In this document: one piece after another, positions 111 through 16,553 of the stretch | How the letters are laid out: every line of letters begins with the position of its first letter | Position numbering within the stretch: position 1 is the first letter of the stretch | IMG/VR virus record: IMGVR_UViG_3300027771_001853 | Location: 233,624 to 297,623 of that record | Strand: one strand, 5' to 3' | Length of the DNA: 64,000 nt | Notes under the pieces: generated by a model | Told to the model about the DNA's origin: nothing | The model's database searches: none | What the model saw: only the letters and a program-made list of their open reading frames with translations | Made by a program: the position numbers and the translations under genes

Positions 111-725
111 TTATTTTATTCCTGTACTACCAAAACCACCTTCGTCTCTGTTAGTACTTTCTAGTTTAGATACTTTTATATATTTTGCCCAATTGGTGTT
201 AAGAATGTTATTTAAAACTGCTTGAGCTACCCTATCTCCATCATTAATAGTAAAAGGGTCTTCACCTAAATTTATTAGGATAATTTTTATTTCACCTCTA
301 TAACTTCTATCAACAGTACCAGGTGTATTAAGAACTGTTATACCGTGTTTTAAAGCTAAACCACTTCTGGGTCTTACTTGTAATTCATAATTCTCTGGTA
401 ATTCAAAGTAAAGGCCGGTAGGAATTAATTTCCTTTTACCTGGATGAATAACCATAGTATCGTTTGGTATTGATGCTCTTAAATCAAAACCACTATCGTC
501 TTTATGTGCGTATTCTGGGTCTGGATTATTAGATGTGTTGACATACTTTACCTCCATCCTTGGAATGTCTTCATCAGTTATAAAAGAAGTGTTTTCTAGT
601 TCTTCTAGGTCTATTCCTAGAATTTTTGGTAATTCCAATGGGGTTTCGTCTATTGAGTTACTGTTTGCGTACCTTTCTATTTGTGATAAAGTACTTTTCA
701 TTTTTTTATTAGTGTTATTATTCAT
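111..725 (-). CDS. dut: trimeric dUTPase
   Basis: All five motifs: SGFDL, RPRSGLA, GTVDRSYRGEI, GDRVAQ, RDEGGFGSTG. Confidence 0.97.
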   Translation of the reverse strand: MNNNTNKKMKSTLSQIERYANSNSIDETPLELPKILGIDLEELENTSFITDEDIPRMEVKYVNTSNNPDPEYAHKDDSGFDLRASIPNDTMVIHPGKRKLIPTGLYFELPENYELQVRPRSGLALKHGITVLNTPGTVDRSYRGEIKIILINLGEDPFTINDGDRVAQAVLNNILNTNWAKYIKVSKLESTNRDEGGFGSTGIK

Positions 726-731
726 AGTACC

Positions 732-1463
732 TTATTTCAATAAATTTATTTTTAACATTAACCTCATGACCTCTAAAAGATTTTTTTCACACCTTTCTTT
801 AATTTCTTTTTTTCTAAATAAATCCCCTTTTCCCCAATATAGTTTGTGTGCATCACTTCGTTCCCACTGAGAATCGTGATGGTCATCTGTTTTTATTCCC
901 ATAGCTGAACTTATAACACCTAAAGAGTACAACCCCCTACCGGAAGCAAAACCCCAAACATCTTTTGTGTCTATAGCTCTAATCTCCCAAGGTTTAGTTT
1001 CGTGATTAGGGAATATTTTTGGTGGTTTTAGACCATTGATAAGCATTCTTTTTGCTATACATGGAATAGTGAATGATTTTATCTCATGTCCACATAATTT
1101 AAAACCTAAATTATCAACTTTTTCAACTATTCCTCTGAATTTAGTAATAATTTCTTTTTCGTCTAACGGATTTTCACCTAAATCACACCAGGTCTCAACT
1201 TTTGGTGTGTTGTCAGTTTGTAGGAATGCTGCACTTACACATATAATTTTAGCAAATTCAGGTATTCCTGCAGCTCTTTTTACGAAAACTTCTTCTGACG
1301 ATAATTTGTCATCCTCCGTAAACCATTTTCTAATGTAATGTATCACATTATTTTCCCAACTATCGTGTAATAGTGGGTATTTGTTTTCAAGTTCACTTAA
1401 ACTAGAAGTTATTCCAGCTGTTTCAATGTGAAAAAATAGTAGTTTGTTTAAATTCTCTGACAT
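732..1463 (-). CDS. PolB-related 3'-5' exonuclease-family protein, catalytic residues substituted (probable pseudonuclease)
   Basis: Family scaffold recognisable (EFAKIICVS, LCGH..K.F.IP.IAKRMLING, KPWEI..IDT) but ExoI FFHIET, ExoII GHEIKSFT, ExoIII RCEKN replace FDIET, GHNxxxFD, YCxxD. Confidence 0.8.
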   Translation of the reverse strand: MSENLNKLLFFHIETAGITSSLSELENKYPLLHDSWENNVIHYIRKWFTEDDKLSSEEVFVKRAAGIPEFAKIICVSAAFLQTDNTPKVETWCDLGENPLDEKEIITKFRGIVEKVDNLGFKLCGHEIKSFTIPCIAKRMLINGLKPPKIFPNHETKPWEIRAIDTKDVWGFASGRGLYSLGVISSAMGIKTDDHHDSQWERSDAHKLYWGKGDLFRKKEIKERCEKNLLEVMRLMLKINLLK

Positions 1464-1526
1464 AGTGTTTTAGGTTTATTGGTTCTTTATAAAACTAACA
1501 AATCTTAACAGTAAAATCAAACAATA

Positions 1527-1769
1527 TTACCCTAATTTTTGATTGTAGTAGTTAGGTGTTAGTTGTGGGTGAAGAATATCTTCATATGGTGCTTTGATGA
1601 CAGATATAACTTCTGAGTCTCTAGTGTCTTCTGAAAGATAATGAGATAACCTTTTATTAGCCTCAAAAACCGATTCTGATTCCACGATATATTTAAATTT
1701 TTTAACTTTGGGTTTTCCTTCACTGTCGATTACCCCTGTCTCGAATGCTACGATTGCTTGATAGTACAT
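1527..1769 (-). CDS. small DUF4494-like protein
   Basis: GKPKVKKFKYIVESESVFEANKR resembles the DUF4494 pattern KKxxExYLVxAxSxTEAExR. Confidence 0.5.
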   Translation of the reverse strand: MYYQAIVAFETGVIDSEGKPKVKKFKYIVESESVFEANKRLSHYLSEDTRDSEVISVIKAPYEDILHPQLTPNYYNQKLG

Positions 1770-1787: not shown

Positions 1788-3020
1788 TTATTGTTTATTT
1801 TTTTTATCTACGAGCATTTTATAATACTCCGCTCTATTTTTAGTAACCACATCTATATGGTACTTTTGTACCGATTCGTATAGTCTTTCCCCCAAATCCT
1901 CCCTTAAAGAAGGGTTAAGTAGTAAAGTTTTTATGTGTTTATCCCACATTTTGTGGTTTTTATGTGTGTCAACTAATAAAGCGTTACCTTCATTATTAAA
2001 TCCTCCACCGTGGTTAGCGGCACTTATTAAATCTATCTGGTATGGACCATAATTCTGAGCAATTAATGCTTTCTTATGGAACCCAGCTTCAATAACTTTT
2101 AATTGGGATTTAACCCTATTAAATGTATGCTCTTTAATCGGAGCAAGACTTATATCGAATTTATTATAGTTAGAAGCGTATGTGGTAATAGGTTTAGTCC
2201 ACACCCTTCTATAAGGCATATCAACCTCATTAGCGTATTCTTCCTCAACAAATTTTAATAAGTGTTTATGGTATTCTGGTGAAACAGTACTGAACTTGTT
2301 AGTGAAAATTTCTTCATATTTGTACCATATAGATTCATGTGGTTCAATTGGTCTTTGTTTTTGTTCACCAGTTGCCTGGTCTATAAAAGTTATACTCCCT
2401 CTAGTGTCAAAACCACACAATACAAATTGTAATTTATCCATATGTGGTTGTAATTTTCCCACAACACCGGATAGTATTCTTAAATCTTCCATATGCGATG
2501 AACCACCTAACCAACCCACCCTTAACCTATCAGAATCTGGTGTGTCAATTTTGAATTGGTTTTCTTTGGGGTCAACAGCATTAGGGAAAACCTCCACTGA
2601 TGGGTTTAGTTTCCTTATTTCGTCAGCGAAGATTGGTGTTGTTGTATTAACATGTTCAGCTAATTTTAAATTTTCTACAATTAATTTATCTAAATTATTT
2701 TGTTTTACCATCATATGAGCTGGATGGTCTATTGTAGGTAACCAATAATCGTCCAAATCCATAATACTGACTATCCCTAACTTTTTTAACCTAGGAGCGA
2801 CTTTTTTAGATAAGTCGTAATTAGGTGATAATGTTCTGTGATAATGAATGATATCGTATTTTTTTAAGTATTCATCATTTTCTAATTGTGGTTCGTAGTC
2901 AATGTCAACCCAAAAATCTTCTGGATATAAATTTTGTAAGGCTAGATGTGGGTCAACACTTCTAAATTTGGAGACTCCCGTTCTATCACTTGGTATTACT
3001 AGTACTTTAATTTGGCTCAT
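1788..3020 (-). CDS. GT-B fold glycosyltransferase
   Basis: Start reassigned to MSQIKVLVIPSDRTG (ATG 3020); MDLDDYW, VFPNAVD, RVGWLGGSSH and DISLAPIKEHTFNRVKSQLKVIEAG motifs typical of phage GT4-like enzymes. Confidence 0.8.
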   Translation of the reverse strand: MSQIKVLVIPSDRTGVSKFRSVDPHLALQNLYPEDFWVDIDYEPQLENDEYLKKYDIIHYHRTLSPNYDLSKKVAPRLKKLGIVSIMDLDDYWLPTIDHPAHMMVKQNNLDKLIVENLKLAEHVNTTTPIFADEIRKLNPSVEVFPNAVDPKENQFKIDTPDSDRLRVGWLGGSSHMEDLRILSGVVGKLQPHMDKLQFVLCGFDTRGSITFIDQATGEQKQRPIEPHESIWYKYEEIFTNKFSTVSPEYHKHLLKFVEEEYANEVDMPYRRVWTKPITTYASNYNKFDISLAPIKEHTFNRVKSQLKVIEAGFHKKALIAQNYGPYQIDLISAANHGGGFNNEGNALLVDTHKNHKMWDKHIKTLLLNPSLREDLGERLYESVQKYHIDVVTKNRAEYYKMLVDKKNKQ

Positions 3021-3079
3021 ATTTCTTTTATTTGAACAAAAAGTAATGAAAATAATTGGTATGTCAAACTTGTGGGCAT

Positions 3080-3108
3080 AAAAAAAAGCCCCAGAAGGGG
3101 CTTTTTTT
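3080..3108. terminator. bidirectional intrinsic terminator downstream of major capsid gene
   Basis: A8-GCCCC-AGAA-GGGGC-T7 hairpin about 20 nt after the capsid stop codon. Confidence 0.85.
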
Positions 3109-3129
3109 ATTAATATATAAAACTTAAGA

Positions 3130-4968
3130 CTATCTAAGTTCTCTAATGTCAAACGTTCTAACACCGTCAATTGTAATAGCTCCATAGAATCTATTGTTAA
3201 CCACCTTTTTAGCGTATCTAGTCATGATACCCTTGATTGGTGCAAAGTTAAATGGATTATACATTGTTGGTGTAAGTTGTAATGGTACATAAGGAGCGTA
3301 AATATATCCTGTGTCTAATAAAGATGTTCCTTTATGTCCAATTAACACTTTGTTAGCTGGGAAGTAAGGGTCTCTATATACAGTATATCTACCTGATAAT
3401 GTTCCAATCTTCTCAATACCCATATTGTACTGGTCTTGGTCTGGAGCTGCGTTTGAAGCGTGGAAGTATTCTAAGTCATCAAATATTGCAGAACATTCAG
3501 ATGAACAAACAATCCAGTTAGCACCACCTCTCAACGTAGATTTGTGAATCTGTGCTGAAATTTGGTTAATAGCAGTAATCAGAGTTTGATTCCAGTCTTT
3601 TTGAGTATAAGGAGCTTGTCCCGCTTGGAAACGTTTCCATCCGTTGTAATCCCATCTTAATGTCCAAGATGCTGCCGCTCTTAAATCTTTAAGAATCTCA
3701 CGGTCTATCTCAGCCGCAACTTCTTCAGATAATAGAGCTGTTAATTCAGCTTCTGCATCAATGTTATGGAACGCACTAACGTCTTGTGCAAGTTCTGGAG
3801 ACCAAGTAGCTCTTAATTTTCTTTCTGTTACCGAAACAGTTACAGAGTCTAAATCAAATGAAACTTCACCTAATTCATCTTCAAATTCAAGGTCTTGGTA
3901 AATTCTGTACTCAGCAGTAAAGTTAGTAGTTGCTAGTGTTGCGTTAACATTAGCTCCAACGTAACCATCTACAGACTCACATGTAATACATGCTGGACAT
4001 GATAAGTCTAATTCAACGTAAAGGTAACCTTCACCATCACAAACGTTGTCATAAGTAGAATCTTTTCCTGGCCAGTAAGAAGTACCTTGTCCTGGAATAT
4101 TATCTACAATACCTTTTCCGTATTTCTGAGTTACTAATCTAAAAGGTACATACCCTTGAGCTGCAACTACCTGAGTAGTACTACCAGTTGGACAACAAGT
4201 TACAGGATTTGTCGCTTTGAATTTCAAAGAAGACAAGAACTCTTCAGTATCCATCTCGTTACCATTAGGTCCAACTAATTTACCTTGTCCTAAGTTATTA
4301 AATCCACCTACTCTAACAAGTAAGCTTCTAAGTCCACCATTAAGACAGTCGTAACTATTATATGTCCCACTAGTAGTTGAACCAGTAAGAGTTTCGTAGA
4401 TAGTGGATGGAGTCATTGTTCCACCAGTAGTGTTCCACGTTACAAATTGAGCTGTACGTGACACACCTGAATATCTACCTTTCGAAATATCGAATAAACC
4501 TCTACCATCTTCATAGTATTGGTCATATAAGTTTACAGTGTCGTAAGTTTGTTGATTTGCGTTAGTTGCACCTGGCATTCCTTTTGGTTCGAAATGATTC
4601 CAAGTGTTATCTGCAGCACCTCCCCAACGTCTGTCGGAGATTTTTGGTACGAAGTAGAACAATTTACCAATTGGTAAGTTCAAAGCTTGTACCGATACAA
4701 TGTCGTTAGCTAGTAATTTAGAAAATACTCTTCTAATTATTGGGAAAACAACTGTTTCAAATGAACCTGAGGCATCAGCTTGTGTTGCCTCGTTGATTAA
4801 ATGCGTCGCTTGGTTTTCATATAACTGAGCGATGTTTTCTCTTGTATGACCTTTAAGTCCATCCAAGAAACCAAGTTTGTTCCATTTTTCAATAGTGTCT
4901 TCTCTAATAACTTTAAGATGTTTCAATCCGATATTACCTACTAATCCTGATTCTAATAAAGCACCCAT
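3130..4968 (-). CDS. gp23: T4 gp23-like major capsid protein with large insertion
   Basis: IIRRVFSKLLANDIVSVQ, RKLRATWSPELAQDV, LSEEVAAEIDREIL, GYIYAPYVPL, GIMTRYA; position in head cluster. Confidence 0.96.
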   Translation of the reverse strand: MGALLESGLVGNIGLKHLKVIREDTIEKWNKLGFLDGLKGHTRENIAQLYENQATHLINEATQADASGSFETVVFPIIRRVFSKLLANDIVSVQALNLPIGKLFYFVPKISDRRWGGAADNTWNHFEPKGMPGATNANQQTYDTVNLYDQYYEDGRGLFDISKGRYSGVSRTAQFVTWNTTGGTMTPSTIYETLTGSTTSGTYNSYDCLNGGLRSLLVRVGGFNNLGQGKLVGPNGNEMDTEEFLSSLKFKATNPVTCCPTGSTTQVVAAQGYVPFRLVTQKYGKGIVDNIPGQGTSYWPGKDSTYDNVCDGEGYLYVELDLSCPACITCESVDGYVGANVNATLATTNFTAEYRIYQDLEFEDELGEVSFDLDSVTVSVTERKLRATWSPELAQDVSAFHNIDAEAELTALLSEEVAAEIDREILKDLRAAASWTLRWDYNGWKRFQAGQAPYTQKDWNQTLITAINQISAQIHKSTLRGGANWIVCSSECSAIFDDLEYFHASNAAPDQDQYNMGIEKIGTLSGRYTVYRDPYFPANKVLIGHKGTSLLDTGYIYAPYVPLQLTPTMYNPFNFAPIKGIMTRYAKKVVNNRFYGAITIDGVRTFDIRELR

Positions 4969-4996: not shown

Positions 4997-6478
4997 TTAT
5001 TTTATTTTACTCATGATATCTAAACTTCTTGCGATTTGTGGGTCAACATACGTTCTTGATTCTCTCAATTTCGATGCTCCCGTCGCAGGAGATTTATTTA
5101 TCTTTTTTTGTACACTTTCACTAAGTTGTACAGTCTTTTTGCTATTTTTACTCTCGTAAGATTCTGTTACAACACTTTTAGTACTAGAAGAAAGTTGTTT
5201 CTTCACGTTCTTATATAGTGCTTTAGATTCTTTAAGAGATTCAACTGAGTCAAACCTTCTAAGAATGTTAATTTTCTCAGACTTGTTAGTTGTGTGTTCT
5301 GTAAACAATTTCGTAGCGTAAGCTAAGTTAGAATTGAATACAGCGACTTCATTTAACTTGTCTCTAAACATTTTAAGAGCTTTTTTATATTCTCCATTTT
5401 TGTTTTTAAGAATACCAACTTCCCCTTTTAGATTATCGATAGTTTCAGTAAGAATTTTAGTGTCGTCCATTCTTTTTCTTTCGTTTATAAAACGAGTTCT
5501 TATAGAACGTTTAGACTCATTCATATTGATTCCGGCTTTTTCTCTTGCAGCTTTATTGAACTTGTTAGTTCTATTACCTGCATGAACTTTTTGACTTAGG
5601 TTGTTTCCACGATACATTTCTTGAAAATCTGCTTCCCCTTCTTCTTTGGCTGTTTCTCTAGTCTTTCCCCCTCGGCCATAACGACCTTTCTTTTTACGGT
5701 CTCCCGTTGGGATATCACCTTTCTTACCACCATAGTTTTCTTCCATATCAGTTTCCATGTCCACTTCATCCATGTCCATGTCCATATCAACTTCATACGT
5801 TGGTTCTTGCGTTTCTTCCATATCGTCATGACGTTCAGAATCATAATGTGCATCCTTTTCTAACTTCTCAATTTGTGAGTAGTCATCTTCAGCTGCATCA
5901 CCAAAATAATTTCCATCATCTTCTTCCAAGTCTTCCGCTTCAACATCAACGTCGTCCTCGTCTTCATCTTCTTCGTTCATATCGACATCATCTTTTTTAG
6001 ATTCGTCTAACTCTATTCGGTACTCCTCTCCAGTACCCTCATCTTCTATGCTGATTACATCATCGTCCTGTTTTACGATTACGCCATCTTCAGCACCCAT
6101 AGCTTTAAAGACTTTTAGTACATCTTCATCCGATGCTTGTGTTAAGTCTAGTGGTTCAAACTCGTCATCGCCTTCAGGTGATGGGATATCGTCAACATCA
6201 ATTTCGTCCGCCATAGCTAAAACGTCCTCCATTTCTGTGTCTCCTCCCTCATCGTCCATGTCCATGACATCTTCGTCATCATCGACCATAGCTTCGAGTT
6301 CTTGTTCTTTTATTACTTTTTTTGTTTTTAAACCATTGTTGGATAATGATTCTTTTACCAGTTCTTCAATTTCTTCCTTCATGGTAGAAGCAAGTATTTC
6401 TTTTGCATTGGATTTAACAGTTTCTTCAATCTGTTGGGCTTCAATCAGAGCCGATTCAAGTAAGGATTTATTACTCAT
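4997..6478 (-). CDS. prohead core/scaffold protein (gp22-like)
   Basis: Highly acidic, low complexity, many L/I-x-E sites, C-terminal LNEVAVFNSNLAYATKLF; lies between protease and capsid genes. Confidence 0.8.
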   Translation of the reverse strand: MSNKSLLESALIEAQQIEETVKSNAKEILASTMKEEIEELVKESLSNNGLKTKKVIKEQELEAMVDDDEDVMDMDDEGGDTEMEDVLAMADEIDVDDIPSPEGDDEFEPLDLTQASDEDVLKVFKAMGAEDGVIVKQDDDVISIEDEGTGEEYRIELDESKKDDVDMNEEDEDEDDVDVEAEDLEEDDGNYFGDAAEDDYSQIEKLEKDAHYDSERHDDMEETQEPTYEVDMDMDMDEVDMETDMEENYGGKKGDIPTGDRKKKGRYGRGGKTRETAKEEGEADFQEMYRGNNLSQKVHAGNRTNKFNKAAREKAGINMNESKRSIRTRFINERKRMDDTKILTETIDNLKGEVGILKNKNGEYKKALKMFRDKLNEVAVFNSNLAYATKLFTEHTTNKSEKINILRRFDSVESLKESKALYKNVKKQLSSSTKSVVTESYESKNSKKTVQLSESVQKKINKSPATGASKLRESRTYVDPQIARSLDIMSKIK

Positions 6479-6580: not shown

Positions 6581-7306
6581 TTATCTATCTAAAAAGTTGT
6601 TTAACTTCTTCATCATAGTTAAAGCATGTGTATTTGGACCATTAAAATCTGCTGGTATTGGTGGTGGTGTTGCCTCTTCTAAAGTCTCTTCATATTTGTC
6701 TTTGTCTTTTATGTCTTTGAATAGGTAAGCTCCTGGAGTTGATGGTGACGACACTAAATCAAAACATATCAATTCAAAATCATCTTGTACTATATTTTTT
6801 CCTCCTTCACTCTTTAGTGACCCTACACCCCTAGAAGAAATACCTAGAGTAACACCATGTCTTAATAGATTAGCTGCTATATCACCAACACATGAGATAA
6901 TACCCTTAGTGTGGTAAGCTGGTGAGGTTAGTATTTGTAGTTTCCCCATTAATGTGTCCCCGTCCCAAAAAGTCTCCACAACTCTATGGGAACTTCTTTC
7001 TAAGTCCACTAATGACGATTCTGGGTGATTTAATTCGGATAAGGCTCTACCTTGTCCTATTAGTTGTTGGTATTTGTCTACCTCTCTCTTTAATATGTCT
7101 GCTGGGTATATCCTACCATTTCTGTTTTGAACCCCACACTTCTGTAGGACAGCATAAATAAAAACACCTTCAGAATCTTTAAATCCTTTGGTTTCTGTTA
7201 TTATTTTTTTATTTAAATCGTAGTGTGGTGATATGTGTCCCGCATCAATTTCTAGTAGGACTCCTTTACCGATTTCGTTAGCTTCAAGTAATTTATATGT
7301 ACGCAT
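6581..7306 (-). CDS. gp21: prohead protease (gp21-like, peptidase S77)
   Basis: QNRNGRIYP, LSELNHP (His), GISSRGVGS (Ser), FDLVSSPSTPGA. Confidence 0.93.
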   Translation of the reverse strand: MRTYKLLEANEIGKGVLLEIDAGHISPHYDLNKKIITETKGFKDSEGVFIYAVLQKCGVQNRNGRIYPADILKREVDKYQQLIGQGRALSELNHPESSLVDLERSSHRVVETFWDGDTLMGKLQILTSPAYHTKGIISCVGDIAANLLRHGVTLGISSRGVGSLKSEGGKNIVQDDFELICFDLVSSPSTPGAYLFKDIKDKDKYEETLEEATPPPIPADFNGPNTHALTMMKKLNNFLDR

Positions 7307-8592: not shown

Positions 8593-10443
8593 CTAATCTT
8601 TTAGTAAATCTTCTAGGTTCTTACTAACATCCTCTAATTCCTTAACACCCTTATTAAGTTTTATTACTCCGTTGTTTGTTCTATCCTCAAGAATTAGTGG
8701 TAAGTCCGAATCTCTGGCAAACATTTCTATCTCTAAGTCTGCACCCATATCAGCTCCTCCAGCTCCACCTTCTTCAGCTGGTGGTTCTTCTGGGGCATCA
8801 CCTCCTAGGTCACCCCCTGAAGGTGGTGGTACGTCACCAAATCCTCCAGTGTCTTCACCTTCTTCTGTACCTGATTCTGCACCTCCTGCGTCTTCTTTTG
8901 GTGTTCCGTATAAAGCATCAATTTTATCAAAAATACCAGTACTTGTTATAACTTCACCAGTTTTACCCAATTCTTCACCAACAGCTTTCTCTATTCTTTG
9001 TTGTTGTAAATCTAACTTAACTTCTTCATCACTCATACCCAACACATTCTTTTTAGCCCATGTTGATGACGTTGCTTGAATCCCATTTCCTGGGTCGGTA
9101 ACACAGTCTCTATATAACGTAACTTTTTCTTTCCAAAGTTCAATTTTTAGTAAGTCCGATTGTGTGGATGGGTTAGTTAACCCTAATGTAAAATTATCTA
9201 ACTCGTCTTCAAAACCTAATATATACAAATGTATTATTGCTATTTTATTTAGTTCTTGTATAATAGCTTTTTGGACGTGGTTTATCGTTCTTGCAAATCT
9301 AATGTCTTGTAATGATAAATTTTTACCCTCACCTACTACGTCTTCAAAACCTAAAAAAGCTTTAGGTACACGTAATGCAGCTAATAATTTTTTCTGTATG
9401 TACTCAATATCCGCAATCTCACTTAAATTCTGTGCACCGGGTAAAGTTTCTATTGGCATAGGTGCTGCCGGGTCACGAACTGGGATAAAGTAATCTTGGT
9501 CCACAGCTAATTGATTGTACCTTAAATCCACATTACCATTTTGTGGGTCAACAACTTGGTCTCTTTTAAATTTATTAGCGATTCTTTGTACATAAGCCTC
9601 AACATCTTTATCATCCATATTCCCAACATAGACCTTAAATACCCTTCTTTCTGGTGCTCTAGAAGTCCTATAAATCAACATGGCATCTTCAGCTAACAAT
9701 AATTGTTTCCATATTCTTCTAGACTTATCTAGTACCGAGGTGCCATATGGTAATCTTCTATCGTCACCCAATAACCTAAAATGAGCTACTTCCCAATTTT
9801 TAAAAACCATATCCTTATCTTTCCAACCAAACTCTATCTTCCTATCTTCAGTGTCACCGTCAAATGCTCCAGCACCATAAGCGTCTGGTTTATTTTCAAT
9901 TCTTTCAATTTCTATGTTTGGTAGTTGGTTTACACCTAAAACCCCCTTTTTAGGGTCCACTTTAAGATACACAAAATTATCACCGTATTTACAAGTATTT
10001 CTAATCCACATAGGTAAATTAGTTTCCACATCTATCACATTATTGAATAGGTCTGCTAAGATACTTTTTATTCTTTTTGATTCGGAGTATATGTTCAACA
10101 TAAACCCTTGTTCTGACATTGTTGTTGCTTCGTCAGCCATAATATCTAAAGCTGCTGAAATTTCCGGAGTAAACTCCATGGATTCATAGTCATAATAAGA
10201 AGCTAACCTTGTAGGTTCATAGTAGACCGCTTGTTGGTATAGTTGGTTTTCTACCTTACTCCATTGATTATTTATATAAGATGATTGTTGTTGTTGTAGT
10301 TTTTCTTTTTCGTACTCAGCTTTGTCGGTTGTTCTTAAAAGCACTTCCTTATCAAAATCGTATGATGGTTTTGGGGCTCTTGGGCCATTTGGTCCAAACA
10401 GGGAAGCTAGTCTCTGATATAATGTTAAGTTTTTTTCTGCCAT
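8593..10443 (-). CDS. gp20: portal protein (gp20-like)
   Basis: PEISAALDIMADE, EDAMLIYRTSRAPERRVFKVYVGN, DYFIPVR, IETLPGAQNLSEIADIEY, ALRVPKAFL. Confidence 0.95.
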   Translation of the reverse strand: MAEKNLTLYQRLASLFGPNGPRAPKPSYDFDKEVLLRTTDKAEYEKEKLQQQQSSYINNQWSKVENQLYQQAVYYEPTRLASYYDYESMEFTPEISAALDIMADEATTMSEQGFMLNIYSESKRIKSILADLFNNVIDVETNLPMWIRNTCKYGDNFVYLKVDPKKGVLGVNQLPNIEIERIENKPDAYGAGAFDGDTEDRKIEFGWKDKDMVFKNWEVAHFRLLGDDRRLPYGTSVLDKSRRIWKQLLLAEDAMLIYRTSRAPERRVFKVYVGNMDDKDVEAYVQRIANKFKRDQVVDPQNGNVDLRYNQLAVDQDYFIPVRDPAAPMPIETLPGAQNLSEIADIEYIQKKLLAALRVPKAFLGFEDVVGEGKNLSLQDIRFARTINHVQKAIIQELNKIAIIHLYILGFEDELDNFTLGLTNPSTQSDLLKIELWKEKVTLYRDCVTDPGNGIQATSSTWAKKNVLGMSDEEVKLDLQQQRIEKAVGEELGKTGEVITSTGIFDKIDALYGTPKEDAGGAESGTEEGEDTGGFGDVPPPSGGDLGGDAPEEPPAEEGGAGGADMGADLEIEMFARDSDLPLILEDRTNNGVIKLNKGVKELEDVSKNLEDLLKD

Positions 10444-10735: not shown

Positions 10736-12469
10736 TTATTTTAGTCCTCCGAATAACCATAAATATTCTTTAGGGTTGTTTGGGTCCATATTGACAGGTC
10801 TCCCTGAAACTGTATGTGGACTCCATACCGGTTTATTACCTCTGGTTGGTTCTTCTCTTGCTACATCGGTGGTAACCCAACTATCTAACATTGCTTTAGC
10901 CTGGTTTGTGTTCCTTTCTAGTTCAGCGAAAGAATTTTGGGCTACGTATAATGCCATAGCAATTGCCATAATTAAGTCATCGTGGTGTCCTTTCATATGG
11001 TCTGGACGACCATTTAAATAAACAAATGTTTTAAACTCATTAATTAACCTATGTGACCTAACAATAAAACCTGTCCTTAATTGTTCTTCTAGAGCTTGTA
11101 TTATTTGTGCTCTTTTACTGTTAAAGTTAATCCCGGGACATTTATCCTCTTGGTTTGGGTTGAACTTCCAAATGTCGTTAGATTTTACATTATCATAATA
11201 TAAATTTTTGTATCCTAGTTCTATTAATTTTCTAGACGTTGACACTCCCATACCACCGGTAATGTCTACCACAATAAAACACTTATATTTTATAGCCCAT
11301 TTATTTGCTAATTCAGCCGCTATATCTGGTGGGATTTTCCCTAAGTATTCTAATACTTGTTCCCTATCATCAAAATCTATAATAGTAAAAGATGTAAAAT
11401 CGTCACTATCCCCTCTGGAAACATCAATCCCCATAATGTAACGATGACCTTCTTTTGGTGGTTTCCAAACCCATAGAGTATTACCTACCCATATCTCTAG
11501 TGGGTCACACACGTCTTTCATTAAGTCAGCTATAGTGTCTGAAGGTATAACATTATCACCCGAACCTAAAAATGCACATTCTAGTTCTTGTGATATTTTT
11601 CTTCTGTCAAACTTTAATTTTTTACACATTTTTTCAAACCAATCAGTAAATGGTTTGTAACCTAACTGTAATAATTCATCAGCCCTATCTAACGAGTTTT
11701 CTAATATTTCTTCATCTTTATACTCATCTCTATTTAATAGGAAATGTGTAATATCTTTAGTTTTTACCCACCTTAATCCTTTATTAAATCTAGGGTCACG
11801 AAACCACGTTAAACTACTAATTTTAAATTGGTTTAGTCCTCTAATGGATTGGTCATATATCTCATAATAAATCCTGTCGAATCCGTTCGGTGTGGATATC
11901 ACCACAACCTTACCCCCTGTAGCTAAAGATGCCATACACGCTGCCCATAAATCATCACCGGACTCTATGTAAGCCGCCTCATCAAATATTAACATAGTGG
12001 GCGTGTAACCCCTCAACGCATCCACAGATGTTGCTACAGCTTTTACTTCTGAATCATTATTTAATTTATAATGTTTTTGAGTGTCTTTGTCTTTAGAAAA
12101 CCCAACATTTATCCAATCGGGCCACTGACGTAAAAATCCTTTTATTTTACTAGCCATCTCTACTGCCGTATCTAATTTATTAGCTAATATAAGTATTTTT
12201 TCTGGTTTTTCTTTTGATGCGAATTGTAGTGTTTTAGATATCCAAGCTGATGTAGCGGTAGACACTCCTGCCTGACGATACTTTAAAACTATATTATCAT
12301 TATAGTTTTCATAGTCATGAATCATCTCTACTTGTTCGGGAAATAATTTAAATGGGACGTACTTACTCTGAGTATTATCATAAGTTTCCAAATATGTTCT
12401 TAGAGCATAATCGGTGTCTTTATAACACTTAGCGTATTCTTTTATATATTCTTGTCTATTCATAGCCAT
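10736..12469 (-). CDS. terL: large terminase subunit (gp17-like)
   Basis: LKYRQAGVST Walker A region, LIFDEAAYI Walker B, ISTPNG, MGIDVSRG and HDDLIMA nuclease motifs; no intein evident. Confidence 0.95.
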   Translation of the reverse strand: MAMNRQEYIKEYAKCYKDTDYALRTYLETYDNTQSKYVPFKLFPEQVEMIHDYENYNDNIVLKYRQAGVSTATSAWISKTLQFASKEKPEKILILANKLDTAVEMASKIKGFLRQWPDWINVGFSKDKDTQKHYKLNNDSEVKAVATSVDALRGYTPTMLIFDEAAYIESGDDLWAACMASLATGGKVVVISTPNGFDRIYYEIYDQSIRGLNQFKISSLTWFRDPRFNKGLRWVKTKDITHFLLNRDEYKDEEILENSLDRADELLQLGYKPFTDWFEKMCKKLKFDRRKISQELECAFLGSGDNVIPSDTIADLMKDVCDPLEIWVGNTLWVWKPPKEGHRYIMGIDVSRGDSDDFTSFTIIDFDDREQVLEYLGKIPPDIAAELANKWAIKYKCFIVVDITGGMGVSTSRKLIELGYKNLYYDNVKSNDIWKFNPNQEDKCPGINFNSKRAQIIQALEEQLRTGFIVRSHRLINEFKTFVYLNGRPDHMKGHHDDLIMAIAMALYVAQNSFAELERNTNQAKAMLDSWVTTDVAREEPTRGNKPVWSPHTVSGRPVNMDPNNPKEYLWLFGGLK

Positions 12470-12509: not shown

Positions 12510-14816
12510 CTATTGGCTCTGTAAGAAATTTAATTCATCTGGTGATAATGAGCCCATACCTTGATTAAATATTTTATCAAGAATGACATTCATGTCTAGG
12601 TCAGATGGTATATCCCCACTTGGTTTAGTTTGTTTTGGTTTTGCTTGTGGTCTTGGTGTTGGTGGTGTTGGTTCTTCTTGACTTACACTTTCATCATAGT
12701 CATCTTCTTGTAAATCTTTAATTATAGATTTTACAATCTTTTGAAGTTCCATTTTACCTTCATCACTCCCCGATAAAATTTGTTTTGCTAAATCAAAAAA
12801 CTCTTCTGGTTCCATCCTTGTGAATTCACTAAAAAGATAATTTTGTATCTCTGTCTTATCTTCATCCATAAGTTCTTCTGGGTAAGCTGCTCTAAATTTT
12901 GACCAAATTACTGGACCTAATCTTAAGTCCCATATTTCTGCTGGTAGGGTATCAGTTGCCTTCATAACCATTTCGGCCTTTTTAGGGTCACTAGGAAGTC
13001 CTTGTGAAGCTAATAATTCCATCACACCTTTTATTAATTCATGTACTAATACTGGGAATGTTATCCCTACTGCTCTTATTGTCGGTGGGTCTGTTTCTAT
13101 ATCTATCTCTTCTTTTCCAGCTGCAGATTCTTCACCTTGTCCCATCATTTGTGCTGTCTCGTCCGACATAATCCAATATACCAAATCATTAACTGACATC
13201 ATAACACCATATAGGTCTAATAACTCTGGGTTTATAGCGTTTATCTTTTCTGGTATCATGTGGTATAGGTAGTGACCTTTCTTAGCTGAACCTTGTATTA
13301 AAGAATTTATAAATCTTCTCTTTTCTTTTTCAGCGTCAAACATCTCAAATGTACCAAATAATTCTTCTTCACTACTCATCTCTTCTTCTGATGGTTCCTC
13401 CTCTTCTCCTTTTTGCATTCCTGACATATCCACTTCACCCATACCAACAATCTTAGCGTCAAATTGTACAGCGTCATCAGGTAGTGACATATATTCTTTT
13501 ACCAATTCTACAGCTAAAGTCTCCAATTGTTCTTTATTTTGTGATTCTATCTGTAATATTTTCATAGTGGAACTTCGTAACATCATCTGTAGTTGCATAA
13601 ACTCGTTTTGAGTTACTTGACCCAAACCAGTATATTTTTTAACATTATCCACAACCTCTTTAAATCTTTCAGAAGCTACTAACTCTTCAAAATTATCTGG
13701 AATACCATCAGCGTCTACATCTGGAAAAGCTGGATTATCCCCTAAAGGGAAATCTTGTGAACCTATTTTTTGTTCAATATCCGATGCCATCCTTTCTGGG
13801 TTATCACCATAATCAATTGGTGGTGCTTCCAATAACTGGGATTTAGTGTATTCTGGTAAAGCTTTAGGTTTTGGTTTAACCCCTGGATGTGGTTTATATG
13901 GTGTACCCCTTCTTTTAGGTGGGGATTTTGTCCCAGGTTTAGTTGGTGCTATAGTTGGTGATTCTGTCTCACTGGGAGCTTCCTGACCACCCGAGAATAT
14001 AGATTCAAAATCTAACCAATCAGGTAAACCAGTTTCTTTTTCTGTTTGTACGTCCTCTACACCAACAACTTCTGTCTCATTAATTGTTCTTATTAATTCA
14101 GATTTTGTCATAGCAGGTCTAGAATTTTTTTGTACAATTTCTTTTATCCAAGTCTCTACTAACTTAGGGTTAGTATTTTTTATATTTTCATCTTGTTCTA
14201 CTTTTTCAGGTAGAGTCCCAAAATCTTCCGTATCATCAGAAAATTCTTTAGCGTATTTTTTCCATTTTTTACCTTCTTTACCTTTTTCATTCGCTTTAGC
14301 GTAAAAATATCTTGCTTGTGCTTTTGATGCGAATTTTTCTATTAGGTGTTGTTTTGTCACCCCTTCAAACATACCCATACCGTCATCGTCATCTTTTGGG
14401 TTCCCAAACCCATCGTCAGTGTCTGGACCTACCTGGTGTGGGTCTTGTGTTACCTCACCTTTTCCTGGGTGTATAGTGTCTTCATCGTACCCCTCATCTA
14501 AGTCGTTCTCATCTATAACATCTTTTTCACCGTTAACGTCTTTCTTTAATTTTTTACCGTCTACTGAAGCATCTGGAAAATCTTCATTTACCTCTAACTC
14601 TTGTTCTTTTTTTGATATGTCACCGTATGCTTTTGATAGGTCTGCGTAATCTTTCGCTATATCAGCTGAGGTCTTATCCTCTTCTTTAACCACCATACTA
14701 TGTAACATATTCATGCCACTTTCATTAAGTTTACTTAAAAAAGGTATAGACATACCCTTACTAAGTAATTTTTTAATTTTTATTCTATTTTGTTTTGTGT
14801 TCGAGATTTTTGGCAT
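12510..14816 (-). CDS. large acidic hypothetical protein, probable virion/prohead component
   Basis: 768 aa; FASKAQARYFYAKA motif, FPVLVHELIKG, C-terminal ILDKIxxxGxxSLSxDExxFL. Confidence 0.7.
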   Translation of the reverse strand: MPKISNTKQNRIKIKKLLSKGMSIPFLSKLNESGMNMLHSMVVKEEDKTSADIAKDYADLSKAYGDISKKEQELEVNEDFPDASVDGKKLKKDVNGEKDVIDENDLDEGYDEDTIHPGKGEVTQDPHQVGPDTDDGFGNPKDDDDGMGMFEGVTKQHLIEKFASKAQARYFYAKANEKGKEGKKWKKYAKEFSDDTEDFGTLPEKVEQDENIKNTNPKLVETWIKEIVQKNSRPAMTKSELIRTINETEVVGVEDVQTEKETGLPDWLDFESIFSGGQEAPSETESPTIAPTKPGTKSPPKRRGTPYKPHPGVKPKPKALPEYTKSQLLEAPPIDYGDNPERMASDIEQKIGSQDFPLGDNPAFPDVDADGIPDNFEELVASERFKEVVDNVKKYTGLGQVTQNEFMQLQMMLRSSTMKILQIESQNKEQLETLAVELVKEYMSLPDDAVQFDAKIVGMGEVDMSGMQKGEEEEPSEEEMSSEEELFGTFEMFDAEKEKRRFINSLIQGSAKKGHYLYHMIPEKINAINPELLDLYGVMMSVNDLVYWIMSDETAQMMGQGEESAAGKEEIDIETDPPTIRAVGITFPVLVHELIKGVMELLASQGLPSDPKKAEMVMKATDTLPAEIWDLRLGPVIWSKFRAAYPEELMDEDKTEIQNYLFSEFTRMEPEEFFDLAKQILSGSDEGKMELQKIVKSIIKDLQEDDYDESVSQEEPTPPTPRPQAKPKQTKPSGDIPSDLDMNVILDKIFNQGMGSLSPDELNFLQSQ

Positions 14817-15189
14817 AATTTAAAATTAAATCTTTTGTATATAGTTTATCTTCAACCGACTTCAAGTCTTCCCCGAAGGAAAATACAGCTCTTGAGTCTG
14901 TAATATTTTCATCATCGTATATCTCCCAACATAGAGAGATAACGTTATCTACAGCGTCACACATACCAAAATAATCCGAGTTTTGGATTAATTCAAATTG
15001 TATATCACTATCATACAGTGTACCTACTTTTGTAATAACTTCTAATTGTGGGGGTGTCGGACTACCTTGTGCTGGTGTTTTGTCCCAATCTTCTCCCCAA
15101 ATATCAGCTACATCATCTGAGAAGATAAATTCGTACACATTTTGCCCTTTGTAGTTGGGTCCTAGTTCATTTACATAGACAAGGAACAT
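14785..15189 (-). CDS. hypothetical protein
   Basis: 134-aa ORF in the minus-strand late operon. Confidence 0.7.
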   Translation of the reverse strand: MFLVYVNELGPNYKGQNVYEFIFSDDVADIWGEDWDKTPAQGSPTPPQLEVITKVGTLYDSDIQFELIQNSDYFGMCDAVDNVISLCWEIYDDENITDSRAVFSFGEDLKSVEDKLYTKDLILNYAKNLEHKTK

Positions 15190-15203
15190 GATTGATTAAT
15201 TTA

Positions 15204-16553
15204 TTAAGATTTTAAACCTTTTCTACTAATCTCTGTAACCTTACCATTACTGTTAAACACTAAAGAACCTTTAGTATTTTTACCAACTACTTCAATGTTG
15301 TCATTTTCAGTTAAGAATTTTCTACTAGCTGATTCTTGTTCAATAGTTTCGGTATGTTCCAAGATAGAAGTTATCTTTCTTGCTTTGGTTAACTTAGAGT
15401 CTAAAAAGTTGTTTCTTTTTTGTTTATTATTTGCTTTTTCTTCTTTACTAACTTTAAAGTAATTGTTAATCACACTACTTACTTTATCGTAACCTTCAGC
15501 AAGTTCTTCCCCGTCTGTTGGTTGGAATATGTTAGCTAATTCATCATCACTGAAATCCATTTTAGTTCCTGATTTTTTAAAACTTCTTAGTGTTTTTTCT
15601 AAAGCTTTTTCTCCGGCCCAACCACCTATTGCTGCTCCTGCTGCACCCATCATAGCTGGGATGTTTTCGTCTAAATCCAAATCACCACCATCGTCTCCCA
15701 TATCAAAATCCATTTCCATTTCTTCGTCGTCTCCCATATCAAATTCTTCTTCACCACTAGACTCCATATCACCCATGTCATCTAAATCATCATATTCAGA
15801 ATCAGTCTCTTCAAATTTTTCTACAATCTCTTCTCTATCTTCAGAATCTAGATTATCTAAATTAACAGCGGAAATAACCGAATTTAACACATATTTTATC
15901 GTTTCAGAATCTAATGCACCTTGACCATCAGCTTTACGTAATTTTTGACCCAATTTACCAGTTAGTTTTTGGATACTTTTAACAGCGTCTTCTTCTTCAG
16001 CACCATCACCACCTTCAACATCAATGTCCATATCCATTTCCATTTCTTCATCATCACCTTCATCACCACCTTCAACATCCATATCCATATCCATCTCTTC
16101 ACCTTCAATACCCATATCGTCACTACCCATATCCATATCGAAATCCATATCTTCTTCTACTTCAGGTTCTGGTGTTGGTAAGTCTATTTTTAGTACTTTT
16201 TTTTGTTCCTCTATAACCCCGTAATTGTTAGCCTCATTAATCGACTTCATTTTGAAGTTTAGTCTTTTTAATGCTGTAGAATAAGAAGTAAAAGTTTCGT
16301 TTCTATTTGCTGACCCTAATTGCCCATCAATATGTGAAAGGTTATTTTCGTCTTTACCAGATTTTATGAAATACTGTTTATTCTCTTTTATTATAGCATA
16401 AACATTACCATCCTGCCCTTTAACACTATAATGGGTATTAGAATAATTTGTTACGTTACTAGGTTTACTACTAATTCCCGCTATTTGTTTTATTCTTTCT
16501 ATTTTTTCTTGTAATGGTAGTTTTTCACTCCCCACTGGTTTTAATGCACTCAT
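15204..16553 (-). CDS. acidic low-complexity protein, scaffold-like
   Basis: 449 aa with (D/E/M/G)-rich tracts like the 4997..6478 scaffold; LQEKIERIKQIAG N-terminus. Confidence 0.65.
   Translation of the reverse strand: MSALKPVGSEKLPLQEKIERIKQIAGISSKPSNVTNYSNTHYSVKGQDGNVYAIIKENKQYFIKSGKDENNLSHIDGQLGSANRNETFTSYSTALKRLNFKMKSINEANNYGVIEEQKKVLKIDLPTPEPEVEEDMDFDMDMGSDDMGIEGEEMDMDMDVEGGDEGDDEEMEMDMDIDVEGGDGAEEEDAVKSIQKLTGKLGQKLRKADGQGALDSETIKYVLNSVISAVNLDNLDSEDREEIVEKFEETDSEYDDLDDMGDMESSGEEEFDMGDDEEMEMDFDMGDDGGDLDLDENIPAMMGAAGAAIGGWAGEKALEKTLRSFKKSGTKMDFSDDELANIFQPTDGEELAEGYDKVSSVINNYFKVSKEEKANNKQKRNNFLDSKLTKARKITSILEHTETIEQESASRKFLTENDNIEVVGKNTKGSLVFNSNGKVTEISRKGLKS

What the first reader, a model, noticed from the sequence alone, without database searches (positions are those of the whole stretch)
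732..1463. Exonuclease homolog that has lost three of its four catalytic acids
Seen: FFHIET (His codon at 1428-1430), GHEIKSFT and RCEKN occupy the ExoI/II/III positions. Established: DEDD nucleases of this PolB-exo-like family need FDIET, GHNxxxFD and YCxxD. So D>H, D>T and D>N, plus N>E and Y>R, while non-catalytic family motifs and the full ORF are retained. Inference: a selected pseudonuclease, e.g. a nucleic-acid end-binding shield, a dominant-negative decoy of the host homolog, or a cyclic-oligonucleotide binder.
Basis: partly seen in the sequence, partly recalled or inferred. Interest (0 to 1): 0.6.

Follow-up and report, generated by a model that had tools for sequence, protein, structure and literature searches.

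The report
Phage exonuclease homolog without its catalytic residues
A marine jumbo phage carries a well-conserved copy of a DNA-polymerase-type proofreading nuclease whose metal-binding residues have been replaced, so selection is probably keeping it as a binding protein rather than as a cutting enzyme.

Summary
Window 732-1463 (-) encodes a 243-aa member of PF10108 (PolB-exonuclease-like). Its ExoI/II/III motifs read FFHIET / GHEIKSFT / RCEKN. The 116 nearest relatives and 73 Bacteroidota chromosomal homologs all read FDIET / GHNxKxFD / YCExD.

The substitutions define a small monophyletic clade: four 90%-identity clusters with 16 full-length variants from many marine metagenomes. The clade is nested among catalytically intact orthologs that occupy the same genomic position, just upstream of dUTPase, in related T4-like phages. 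It sits on the longest internal branch of the family tree.

Within the clade dN/dS is 0.06-0.20, the same as for the neighbouring dUTPase and major capsid genes. The gene is therefore selected, not decaying. The two "broken" copies are errors of low-coverage long-read assembly.

The AlphaFold model is confident (pLDDT 91.7) and matches PolB exonuclease domains (Z 17).

- His12 is unique to this genome; the clade has Asn.
- Position 228 varies (N/S/D).
- N127E adds a new, invariant acid.
- The catalytic Tyr became Arg/Lys.

The phage's own PolB keeps an intact proofreading domain.

Most likely this is a non-hydrolytic binder of 3' ends or nucleotides. Its biological role is unknown. It is a new variant of a known kind (pseudo-exonuclease) and of moderate interest.

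The parts
732..1463 (-). 243-aa PolB-exonuclease-like (PF10108) protein with substituted catalytic residues (pseudo-exonuclease candidate), P0001
   Evidence: ORF and translation. Pfam and PHROG. AF2 model pLDDT 91.7. Z 17.1 to PolB exo domains. dN/dS 0.06-0.20.
1419..1436 (-). ExoI motif FFHIET. The family has FDIET. D12 is replaced by H (N in the rest of the clade); E14 is kept.
1068..1091 (-). ExoII motif GHEIKSFT. The family has GHNxKxFD. N127>E is invariant in the clade; D132>T (T or S in the clade). K129 and F131 are kept.
   Evidence: The ExoII columns align to Pol delta GYNTTNFDIP and to the phage PolB YNSSNFD.
780..794 (-). ExoIII motif RCEKN. The family has YCExD. Y224>R (R or K in the clade); D228>N (N, S or D in the clade).
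1487..1522 (-). 36-nt non-coding block upstream of the gene. It is nearly invariant across the clade and unique in the genome. Probably a promoter or operator; no convincing RNA fold.
1527..1769 (-). 80-aa DUF4494-like protein, the conserved upstream neighbour. It is 81% identical to its counterpart in a phage whose exonuclease is only 41% identical.
111..725 (-). dUTPase, the immediate downstream neighbour (6-nt gap). This adjacency is conserved in both inactive-clade and active-clade phages.
1788..3020 (-). 410-aa glycosyltransferase-like protein. The start at 3020 follows the orthologs; the 465-aa ORF call that reaches 3185 overlaps the capsid gene.
3130..4968 (-). T4 gp23-type major capsid protein. 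It serves as context and as the selection control.

Best explanation
The gene encodes a pseudo-exonuclease. It is a stand-alone PolB-exonuclease-fold protein (PF10108) that descends from a catalytically intact phage exonuclease and is now kept by purifying selection for a role that does not need canonical two-metal hydrolysis.

Shown:
- The fold and most non-catalytic family motifs are intact.
- The metal ligands D12, D132 and (mostly) D228, the substrate Asn127 and the catalytic Tyr224 are replaced throughout a small clade of marine T4-like jumbo phages of about 300 kb.
- Catalytically intact orthologs sit at the same position, upstream of dUTPase, in related phages.
- The clade evolves under constraint as strong as that on its dUTPase and capsid genes.
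- The phage's own PolB keeps its own proofreading domain.

Inferred mechanism: the protein still docks a nucleic-acid 3' end, or a nucleotide, in the old active-site cleft. The stacking and hydrophobic residues F10 and F131 and the basic residues K129, K138, R139 and K157 are all kept. The protein holds the ligand instead of cutting it. The two Mg2+ ions that normally bridge the scissile phosphate are replaced by a cationic Arg/Lys at the Tyr position and by hydrogen-bond donors (Asn/His, Thr/Ser, Asn/Ser). Glu127 is placed where the ExoII Asn normally contacts the terminal sugar.

What that binding achieves in infection is not known. Possibilities include protecting or marking 3' ends, competing with the Bacteroidota host homolog, or scaffolding.
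For: - Family membership: PF10108 27.1 bits, PHROG 25228.
- Catalytic columns: 116 of 121 relatives and 73 of 73 Bacteroidota homologs keep D-E/N-D/Y-D. Only the query clade differs.
- Clade pattern in 16 full-length variants: position 12 N15/H1, 14 E16, 127 E16, 132 S11/T5, 224 R11/K5, 228 N9/D5/S2.
- Altered columns are enriched at catalytic positions, p = 0.004, while 32 of 44 near-invariant family columns are kept unchanged.
- Selection: NG86 dN/dS is 0.06-0.20 at dS 0.3-1.5. The controls are dUTPase 0.07-0.18 and gp23 0.11-0.22.
- Synteny: the inactive copies and the intact orthologs P0009 and P0069 all lie directly upstream of dUTPase and a glycosyltransferase cluster.
- Tree: the clade is monophyletic (support 1.0), nested, and on the longest internal branch (0.95 against a median of 0.03).
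- Structure: pLDDT 91.7. The best matches are PolB exo domains: Foldseek 4ahc, 2gv9, 5mdn; VIA Z 17.1 over model residues 4-243 against residues 163-353 of 5mdn_A.
- No need for a proofreader in trans: the phage PolB carries FDLET (164), YNSSNFD (223) and YLMDD (377).
- No second PF10108 gene and no RNase_T, Rv2179c-like or PolA-exo gene in the 298-kb genome.
- Abundance: near-identical DNA occurs in runs from about 10 or more independent marine studies.
- Precedents for DEDD-fold pseudo-exonucleases that bind nucleic acid: PML PXL and Exuperantia (PMC13659232).
- Established knowledge: single Asp/Glu substitutions in ExoI-III of Klenow, T4, phi29 and Pol delta/epsilon lower exonuclease activity by orders of magnitude.
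Against: - No activity or binding assay exists.
- E14 is retained, E127 is newly gained and invariant, and the family-wide D165 is kept, so a reduced or alternative metal site is conceivable.
- I could not read the model's coordinates to measure distances in the site.
- No expression evidence: metatranscriptome contigs covered only the capsid gene.
- No partner was identified.
- The substrate of the intact family (DNA or RNA) is itself unknown.
Confidence: 0.6

Rival explanations
1. It is still a nuclease with a remodelled active site. E14, the new E127 and D165, perhaps with Asn/His12, would hold one metal ion, and Arg/Lys224 would stabilise the transition state in place of metal A and Tyr. 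Activity would be lower or of a different specificity.
For: E127 is invariant in all 16 clade variants, and E14 and D165 are invariant. Strong purifying selection is compatible with an enzyme. From established knowledge, some DEDD-fold proteins with non-canonical sites keep or gain activity, for example yeast Pop2 (SEDQt) and the Maelstrom domain.
Against: The replaced positions are chemically heterogeneous within a clade that is only 12-28% diverged: H/N, T/S, R/K and N/S/D. The same columns are 100% invariant across intact relatives that are 60-70% diverged. A rebuilt catalytic site would be expected to be fixed. The ExoI Asp that bridges both metals is gone in every member.
Confidence: 0.17
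2. It is a decoy or dominant-negative of a host factor. It would mimic the Bacteroidota chromosomal homolog, occupying that enzyme's substrate or partner, or titrating a host defence component, without degrading anything.
For: More than 466 genome loci, almost all Bacteroidota chromosomes, encode a same-sized, catalytically intact homolog at 28-34% identity. The nearest cultured capsid relatives infect Flavobacterium, so the probable host carries the homolog.
Against: Nothing shows that the host enzyme has a partner or is oligomeric. Its gene neighbourhoods are heterogeneous housekeeping genes. Related phages carry an active version at the same locus, so the ancestral phage role was enzymatic. 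This rival overlaps with the best explanation, since it is one possible use of a non-cutting binder.
Confidence: 0.12
3. It is a scaffold subunit. It would be kept only for protein-protein contacts made by the ancestral enzyme, for example with the adjacent dUTPase, the DUF4494-like protein or replication proteins. Nucleic-acid binding would be irrelevant.
For: The gene order small protein - exonuclease - dUTPase is conserved, with overlapping or near-abutting genes in the active-clade locus L019. The longest conserved stretch shared by active and inactive proteins (residues 134-170) is non-catalytic.
Against: No neighbour shows a matching burst of change. The small protein is 81% identical across phages whose exonucleases are 41% identical.
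Confidence: 0.08
4. It is a decaying relic: a recently inactivated gene drifting towards loss.
For: Two cluster members are split or frameshifted.
Against: Both of those lie on 5x and 3x long-read contigs where the neighbouring dUTPase and glycosyltransferase genes are fragmented too. dN/dS is 0.06-0.20 at dS up to about 1.5. There are 16 intact full-length variants.
Confidence: 0.03

Closest known systems
[quoted passage not shown] P0009, P0069) and chromosomal homologs across Bacteroidota
   Same: Same family by HMM, same length (about 230-245 aa) and same fold. It has the same genomic position next to dUTPase in related phages. 32 of the 44 near-invariant family columns are kept.
   Different: The defining DxE / NxxxFD / YxxxD residues are replaced by [H/N]xE / ExxxF[T/S] / [R/K]xxx[N/S/D]. 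The family itself has no characterised member that I could find. In the held library PF10108 is mentioned in only one paper, a classification study.
Exonuclease domain of family B DNA polymerases (archaeal Pfu/KOD/Tgo, E. coli Pol II, Pol delta, HSV Pol)
   Same: These are the best structural matches: Z 16-17, 175-181 aligned residues, covering model residues 2-243 (Foldseek). The ExoII columns align with Pol delta GYNTTNFDIP. From established knowledge, naturally inactivated exonuclease domains also exist inside PolB enzymes (Pol alpha, Pol zeta).
   Different: This protein stands alone with no polymerase domain and is only 12-19% identical to them. The phage's real PolB is a separate 902-aa gene with intact exonuclease motifs.
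DEDD-fold pseudo-exonucleases that bind nucleic acid: Drosophila Exuperantia and the PXL module of PML
   Same: The principle is the same: an exonuclease fold is retained, the catalytic residues are lost, and the domain is used for nucleic-acid binding (PMC13659232, which cites Lazzaretti et al. 2016 for Exuperantia).
   Different: Those are eukaryotic, belong to other branches of the DnaQ-like superfamily, and sit inside larger proteins. No specific homology was tested or is expected. For the phage protein, binding is only inferred.
Pol III epsilon-theta type pair (a small subunit bound to a DnaQ-like exonuclease)
   Same: An 80-aa protein is encoded directly upstream. In an active-clade phage its stop codon overlaps the start of the exonuclease gene.
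   Different: The small protein has no similarity to theta, and no clear fold match (best Z 7.4). It is absent from that position in other active-clade loci. There is no evidence of binding.

Membership tests
PF10108 DNA_pol_B_exo2 (sequence family) | Score above Pfam's gathering threshold | tested here: met
   27.1 bits against a cut-off of 24; 31.4 bits in the six-frame genome scan. It is weaker than intact members, which score 64-70 bits.
PF10108 DNA_pol_B_exo2 (sequence family) | PolB-exonuclease / RNase H-like fold | tested here: met
   AF2 pLDDT 91.7, pTM 0.89. VIA Z 17.1, rmsd 3.5 over 180 residues to 5mdn_A 163-353.
DEDDy 3'-5' exonucleases (functional class) | ExoI Asp-x-Glu | tested here: not met
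   H12-I-E14 here and N-x-E in the rest of the clade. D is 100% conserved in 116 relatives and 73 bacterial homologs.
DEDDy 3'-5' exonucleases (functional class) | ExoII Asn-x3-Phe-Asp | tested here: not met
   E127-x3-F131-T132, with S132 in most of the clade. N and D are 100% conserved in intact relatives.
DEDDy 3'-5' exonucleases (functional class) | ExoIII Tyr-x3-Asp | tested here: not met
   R224-x3-N228, and [R/K]-x3-[N/S/D] across the clade. One subclade keeps the Asp but not the Tyr.
DEDDy 3'-5' exonucleases (functional class) | Metal-dependent 3'-5' exonuclease activity | not testable with these tools
   This needs purified protein and labelled substrates.
Pseudo-exonucleases (Exuperantia / PML-PXL type, a functional analogy) | Exonuclease fold retained, catalytic residues lost, gene under selection | tested here: met
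Pseudo-exonucleases (Exuperantia / PML-PXL type, a functional analogy) | Demonstrated nucleic-acid binding without cleavage | not testable with these tools
   Only inferred, from the retained residues F10, F131, K129, K138, R139 and K157.
Trans-acting proofreading subunit of a phage polymerase (PHROG 403 'DNA polymerase exonuclease subunit') | A polymerase that lacks its own exonuclease domain, plus an active exonuclease subunit | tested here: not met
   The PHROG 403 hit is weak (3.5e-05). The phage PolB has its own intact exonuclease motifs. The candidate lacks the catalytic residues.
T4 DexA / RNase T / Rv2179c-like stand-alone DEDDh exonucleases | Match to PF00929 or PF16473 | tested here: not met
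   No match anywhere in the 298-kb genome.

The most novel reading that the evidence does not exclude
A phage converted its own exonuclease into a non-cutting 'clamp' for 3' ends or short nucleotides and uses it against the host. It might shield phage DNA or RNA 3' ends from host or defence exonucleases, or jam the substrate or partner of the conserved Bacteroidota homolog. That would be a new class of phage counter-measure built from a dead DEDD domain.
Probability: 0.15. Interest if true: 0.75.

Novelty: new variant of a known kind. Interest (0 to 1): 0.45.

Why it matters
Pseudo-enzymes are well documented in eukaryotes but rarely documented in phages, where a "nuclease" annotation is usually taken at face value. 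Here the comparison is unusually clean. The same gene, at the same genomic position, is catalytically intact in many related phages and in the host phylum. In one abundant marine clade it is disabled yet strongly conserved.

That offers a natural experiment for two questions: what the uncharacterised PF10108 family does, and how a nuclease fold is repurposed for binding. It is also a warning for automated annotation, because this protein is called a "3'-5' exonuclease" by homology. If the binder acts against host nucleases or defences, it would add a new type of phage counter-measure.

Tried and rejected
- Sequence search of the PDB with the single protein or the family profile gave nothing significant. 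The only relevant hit was the Pol delta ExoII stretch at E = 0.76. hhalign against the phage's own PolB exo domain gave low probability, although it aligned ExoII.
- Expression: four marine metatranscriptome runs (contigs only) cover the capsid gene and a little of the glycosyltransferase-like gene, but not 732-1463. This is no evidence either way.
- Complex prediction of the exonuclease homolog with the upstream DUF4494-like protein returned no answer (score 0.00, controls not run). It is not evidence for or against binding.
- The fold of the DUF4494-like protein was modelled at pLDDT 73, with best Z 7.4 to small ribosomal and PurS-like alpha/beta proteins. No assignment is possible.
- The conserved 36-nt upstream block shows no convincing RNA structure (-3.8 kcal/mol, one covarying pair) and no second copy in the genome.
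- The sigma-70 and terminator scans were not above shuffled expectation.
- Gene neighbourhoods of 80 Bacteroidota homologs are conserved only within lineages and are heterogeneous: RNase R, tRNA-binding protein, PheS, uridine kinase, GAF, OsmC. They give no firm clue to the substrate.
- Gene decay is rejected. The split copies lie on 3x and 5x long-read contigs whose neighbouring genes are fragmented as well.
- A role as a trans proofreading subunit is rejected, because PolB has its own intact exonuclease domain.
- The cyclic-oligonucleotide sponge idea has nothing in favour of it. No CBASS or anti-CBASS context was seen, and it was not tested further.
- I could not read the model's coordinates, so no active-site distances were measured.
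- The large profile search was not run. The word search already returned more than 150 relatives with a clear gap between 43% and 70% identity.

Full report
**1. What is there**

Window 732-1463 (minus strand) is an intact 243-codon ORF, P0001. It reads FFHIET at 1419-1436, with the His codon at 1428-1430. It reads GHEIKSFT at 1068-1091 and RCEKN at 780-794. It matches Pfam PF10108 (DNA_pol_B_exo2) just above threshold, at 27.1 bits against 24, and 31.4 bits in the genome scan. It also matches PHROG 25228 "3'-5' exonuclease" at 1.4e-14.

**2. The genome**

The window is the last 64 kb of a 297,623-bp virus record (GC 34.7%, estimated 93% complete). The virus is a T4-like jumbo myovirus:
- gp23-type capsid protein (3130-4968)
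- gp21-type prohead protease (6581-7306)
- gp20-type portal (8593-10443)
- large terminase (10736-12469)
- dUTPase (111-725)

The closest cultured capsid relatives are Flavobacterium phages. The nearest cultured homologs of the exonuclease-like gene, at about 29% identity, are in Cellulophaga and Flavobacterium phages. Chromosomal homologs are almost exclusively in Bacteroidota. A Bacteroidota host is therefore likely; this is an inference.

Near-identical DNA is present in marine metagenome runs from about ten or more independent studies.

**3. Are these really the catalytic positions?**

A word-based search returned 159 relatives, of which 120 were listed. In alignments of 20 and of 121 sequences, the family consensus is FDIET / CGHNxKxFDIP / YCExD.
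- 116 of the 121 sequences carry D12, E14, N127, D132, Y224 and D228 in P0001 numbering.
- All 73 Bacteroidota chromosomal homologs that I extracted also carry them, although they are only 28-34% identical.
- The ExoII columns align with yeast Pol delta GYNTTNFDIP and with the phage's own PolB YNSSNFD.

The AlphaFold2 model is confident (pLDDT 91.7, pTM 0.89). It superposes on the exonuclease domains of family B polymerases over its whole length. Foldseek finds 4ahc, 2gv9 and 5mdn. VIA gives Z 17.1 for model residues 4-243 against 5mdn_A residues 163-353, and similar values for Pfu, KOD, Tgo, E. coli Pol II and Pol delta. The register places residues 12/14, 132 and 224/228 where ExoI, ExoII and ExoIII lie in those enzymes.

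By established knowledge of DEDD nucleases (Klenow, T4, RB69, phi29, epsilon, Pol delta/epsilon), the ExoI Asp bridges both metal ions. Single substitutions of any of the four acids lower activity by orders of magnitude.

**4. Who shares the substitutions?**

Only the query's own clade shares them. It comprises four 90%-identity clusters represented by P0001/P0002, P0003, P0004 and P0005, which are 70-88% identical to P0001. Among 16 distinct full-length variants:

| Position | Intact family | Clade variants |
|---|---|---|
| 12 | D | N in 15, H only in this genome |
| 14 | E | E in all |
| 127 | N | E in all |
| 132 | D | S in 11, T in 5 |
| 224 | Y | R in 11, K in 5 |
| 228 | D | N in 9, D in 5, S in 2 |

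- The His is private to this genome.
- One subclade still has the ExoIII Asp.
- The N>E change creates a new, strictly conserved acid in the site.

Of the 44 family columns that are at least 97% conserved in intact relatives, the clade keeps 32 unchanged. Five of the six catalytic or substrate columns are altered, against 7 of the 38 others (Fisher p = 0.004). The retained residues include F10, T15, K129, F131, K138, R139, the KPWE and IDTK motifs, and W170. From knowledge of PolB and Klenow exonuclease sites, these plausibly form the pocket and the phosphate contacts for the 3'-terminal nucleotides.

**5. Selected or decaying?**

I extracted the gene and its neighbours from 13 independent contigs of the clade. 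All are syntenic: capsid, a 410-aa glycosyltransferase-like gene, the 80-aa DUF4494-like gene, the exonuclease homolog, dUTPase, then glycosyltransferases.

Nei-Gojobori dN/dS values:

| Gene | dN/dS | Note |
|---|---|---|
| Exonuclease homolog | 0.06-0.20 | dS from 0.3 to about 1.5 |
| dUTPase | 0.07-0.18 | |
| Capsid (gp23) | 0.11-0.22 | |
| DUF4494-like | 0.05-0.35 | |

The exonuclease homolog is thus indistinguishable from neighbours that are certainly functional.

Two cluster members looked broken. Both lie on long-read contigs labelled 5x and 3x, in which the neighbouring dUTPase and glycosyltransferase genes are fragmented too. I read these as indel errors of assembly, not decay.

**6. 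Origin**

Catalytically intact relatives P0009 (41% identical; a 149-kb TARA contig) and P0069 (40%; found on more than 100 contig sets) occupy the same position. They lie directly upstream of dUTPase and a glycosyltransferase cluster. In the P0009 locus the gene is preceded by the same DUF4494-like gene. They are therefore positional orthologs in related phages.

In a maximum-likelihood tree of the 121 proteins, the inactive clade is monophyletic (support 1.0). It is nested beside the P0006-P0015/P0022 group (support 0.86). It sits on the longest internal branch of the tree, 0.95 substitutions per site against a median of 0.03.

The pattern is a burst of change on the stem followed by tight constraint in the crown. 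That is what a change of function predicts, rather than a loss.

Neighbouring genes show no matching burst. Between this phage and the P0009 phage the identities are:

| Gene | Identity |
|---|---|
| DUF4494-like protein | 81% |
| Glycosyltransferase-like protein | 64% |
| dUTPase | 54% |
| Exonuclease homolog | 41% |

**7. What it is not**

It is not a proofreading subunit supplied in trans. The phage's 902-aa PolB (genome 167003-169711) has its own exonuclease domain with FDLET, YNSSNFD and YLMDD intact.

There is no second PF10108 gene in the genome. There is also no RNase_T, Rv2179c-like or PolA-type exonuclease, and no PolA or Pol III alpha.

**8. Most likely mechanism (inference)**

The site changes from four carboxylates plus Tyr, built to hold two Mg2+ ions, to two carboxylates (E14, E127), a cation (R/K224) and hydrogen-bond donors. 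The substrate pocket is preserved.

The simplest reading is a protein that still docks a 3' end or a nucleotide but holds it without hydrolysis. Arg/Lys would take over the phosphate contact of the lost metal ions. This is the logic of known DEDD-fold pseudo-exonucleases such as Exuperantia and the PXL module of PML, which bind nucleic acids (PMC13659232).

The main rival is a remodelled, weaker or different nuclease site that uses E14, E127 and D165. Against it, the replaced positions are chemically heterogeneous inside a shallow clade (H/N, T/S, R/K, N/S/D). The original residues, by contrast, are invariant over much deeper divergence.

The downstream biology is open: end protection, competition with the host homolog, or scaffolding. 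The host phylum does encode an intact homolog among housekeeping genes (RNase R, a tRNA-binding protein, PheS, uridine kinase, GAF and others). A decoy role therefore cannot be dismissed. Those neighbourhoods are too heterogeneous to reveal the family's substrate.

**9. Things that gave nothing**

- Metatranscriptome contigs cover only the capsid gene.
- The complex prediction with the DUF4494-like protein returned no answer.
- The fold of that small protein could not be assigned.
- The conserved 36-nt block upstream of the gene (1487-1522) is unique in the genome and shows no convincing RNA structure. I read it as a probable promoter or operator.

**10. Novelty and verdict**

PF10108 is an uncharacterised family. 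In the held library it appears in one classification paper. A search for pseudo-exonucleases in bacteriophages found nothing relevant.

Dead exonuclease folds reused for binding are a known theme. This is therefore a new variant of a known kind. It is the first clear case I can document for this family and in a phage, and it comes with a clean contrast between active and inactive orthologs.

Confidence is about 0.9 that the canonical catalytic set is lost and that the gene is under purifying selection. It is about 0.6 that the protein acts as a non-hydrolytic binder. It is low for any specific biological role. Interest is moderate (0.45).

Noticed in passing
window 1527-1769 (-); L019:7771-8004; L005, L006, L010, L015: The 80-aa DUF4494-like protein upstream of the gene is extremely conserved. 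It is 81% identical between this phage and the P0009 phage, whose exonuclease homologs are only 41% identical (dUTPase 54%). 55 of its 80 positions are invariant. Its function is unknown and its fold could not be assigned (pLDDT 73, best Z 7.4).
   Followed up: partly
window 1487-1522 (-): A 36-nt non-coding block (GTTTGATTTTACTG..ATTTGTTAGTTTTATAA) lies between the DUF4494-like gene and the exonuclease homolog. It is nearly invariant in the clade even though synonymous sites are saturated, and it is unique in the 298-kb genome. The active-clade locus L019 has no such spacer, because its genes overlap. It contains a TTTG - 20 nt - TAGTTTTA arrangement that resembles Bacteroidota -33/-7 promoter elements; that resemblance is my recollection and was not tested.
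   Followed up: partly
window 1788-3185 (-): The longest ORF call (465 aa) overlaps the end of the capsid gene. Orthologs show that the real product is 410 aa and starts at 3020. It matches PHROG 7162 glycosyltransferase and is 90% identical to the copy in L006.
   Followed up: yes
window 4997-6478 (-): A 493-aa protein between the capsid and prohead-protease genes is 26% Asp+Glu, with long acidic low-complexity runs, and has no family match. By position it is probably a scaffold or prohead-core protein.
   Followed up: no
window 21058-23106 (+): A 682-aa protein gives a very strong match to PHROG 4871 'ATP-dependent protease' (7e-235). It is the only large gene on the plus strand in this part of the window.
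   Followed up: no
window 23103-28529 (-) and 28531-31866 (-): Two giant adjacent ORFs (1808 and 1111 aa) have no PHROG match. The 768-aa and 449-aa ORFs at 12510-16553 have none either.
   Followed up: no
L006, L010, L014, L015, L019, L020 (downstream of dUTPase): In all relatives the dUTPase is followed by a long, variable cluster of glycosyltransferases and sugar-nucleotide enzymes (Glyco_tranf_2_5, Glyco_transf_11, Glyco_transf_7C, epimerases, UDP-glucose dehydrogenase, TOD1_MUCI70). This suggests that these phages glycosylate something on a large scale. In this genome the corresponding region lies just outside the window.
   Followed up: no
L018:6085-8702: In a 301-kb contig with an intact homolog (P0079) the gene is not next to dUTPase. 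It lies two genes downstream of a Thg1-like (tRNA-His guanylyltransferase family) gene. In Bacteroidota chromosomes the homolog is sometimes next to RNase R, a tRNA-binding-domain protein or PheS. This is a weak hint that the family's substrate could be RNA.
   Followed up: partly
window 3216-4966: Contigs from four marine metatranscriptome runs lie on the capsid gene, several at 90-99% identity. Relatives of this phage therefore appear in RNA libraries. The contigs cannot show strand or expression level.
   Followed up: partly
L028, L029: Low-coverage long-read metagenome contigs (3x-5x) of this phage group carry many frameshifted genes. Protein clusters built from them contain artefactual fragments that mimic pseudogenes.
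   Followed up: yes
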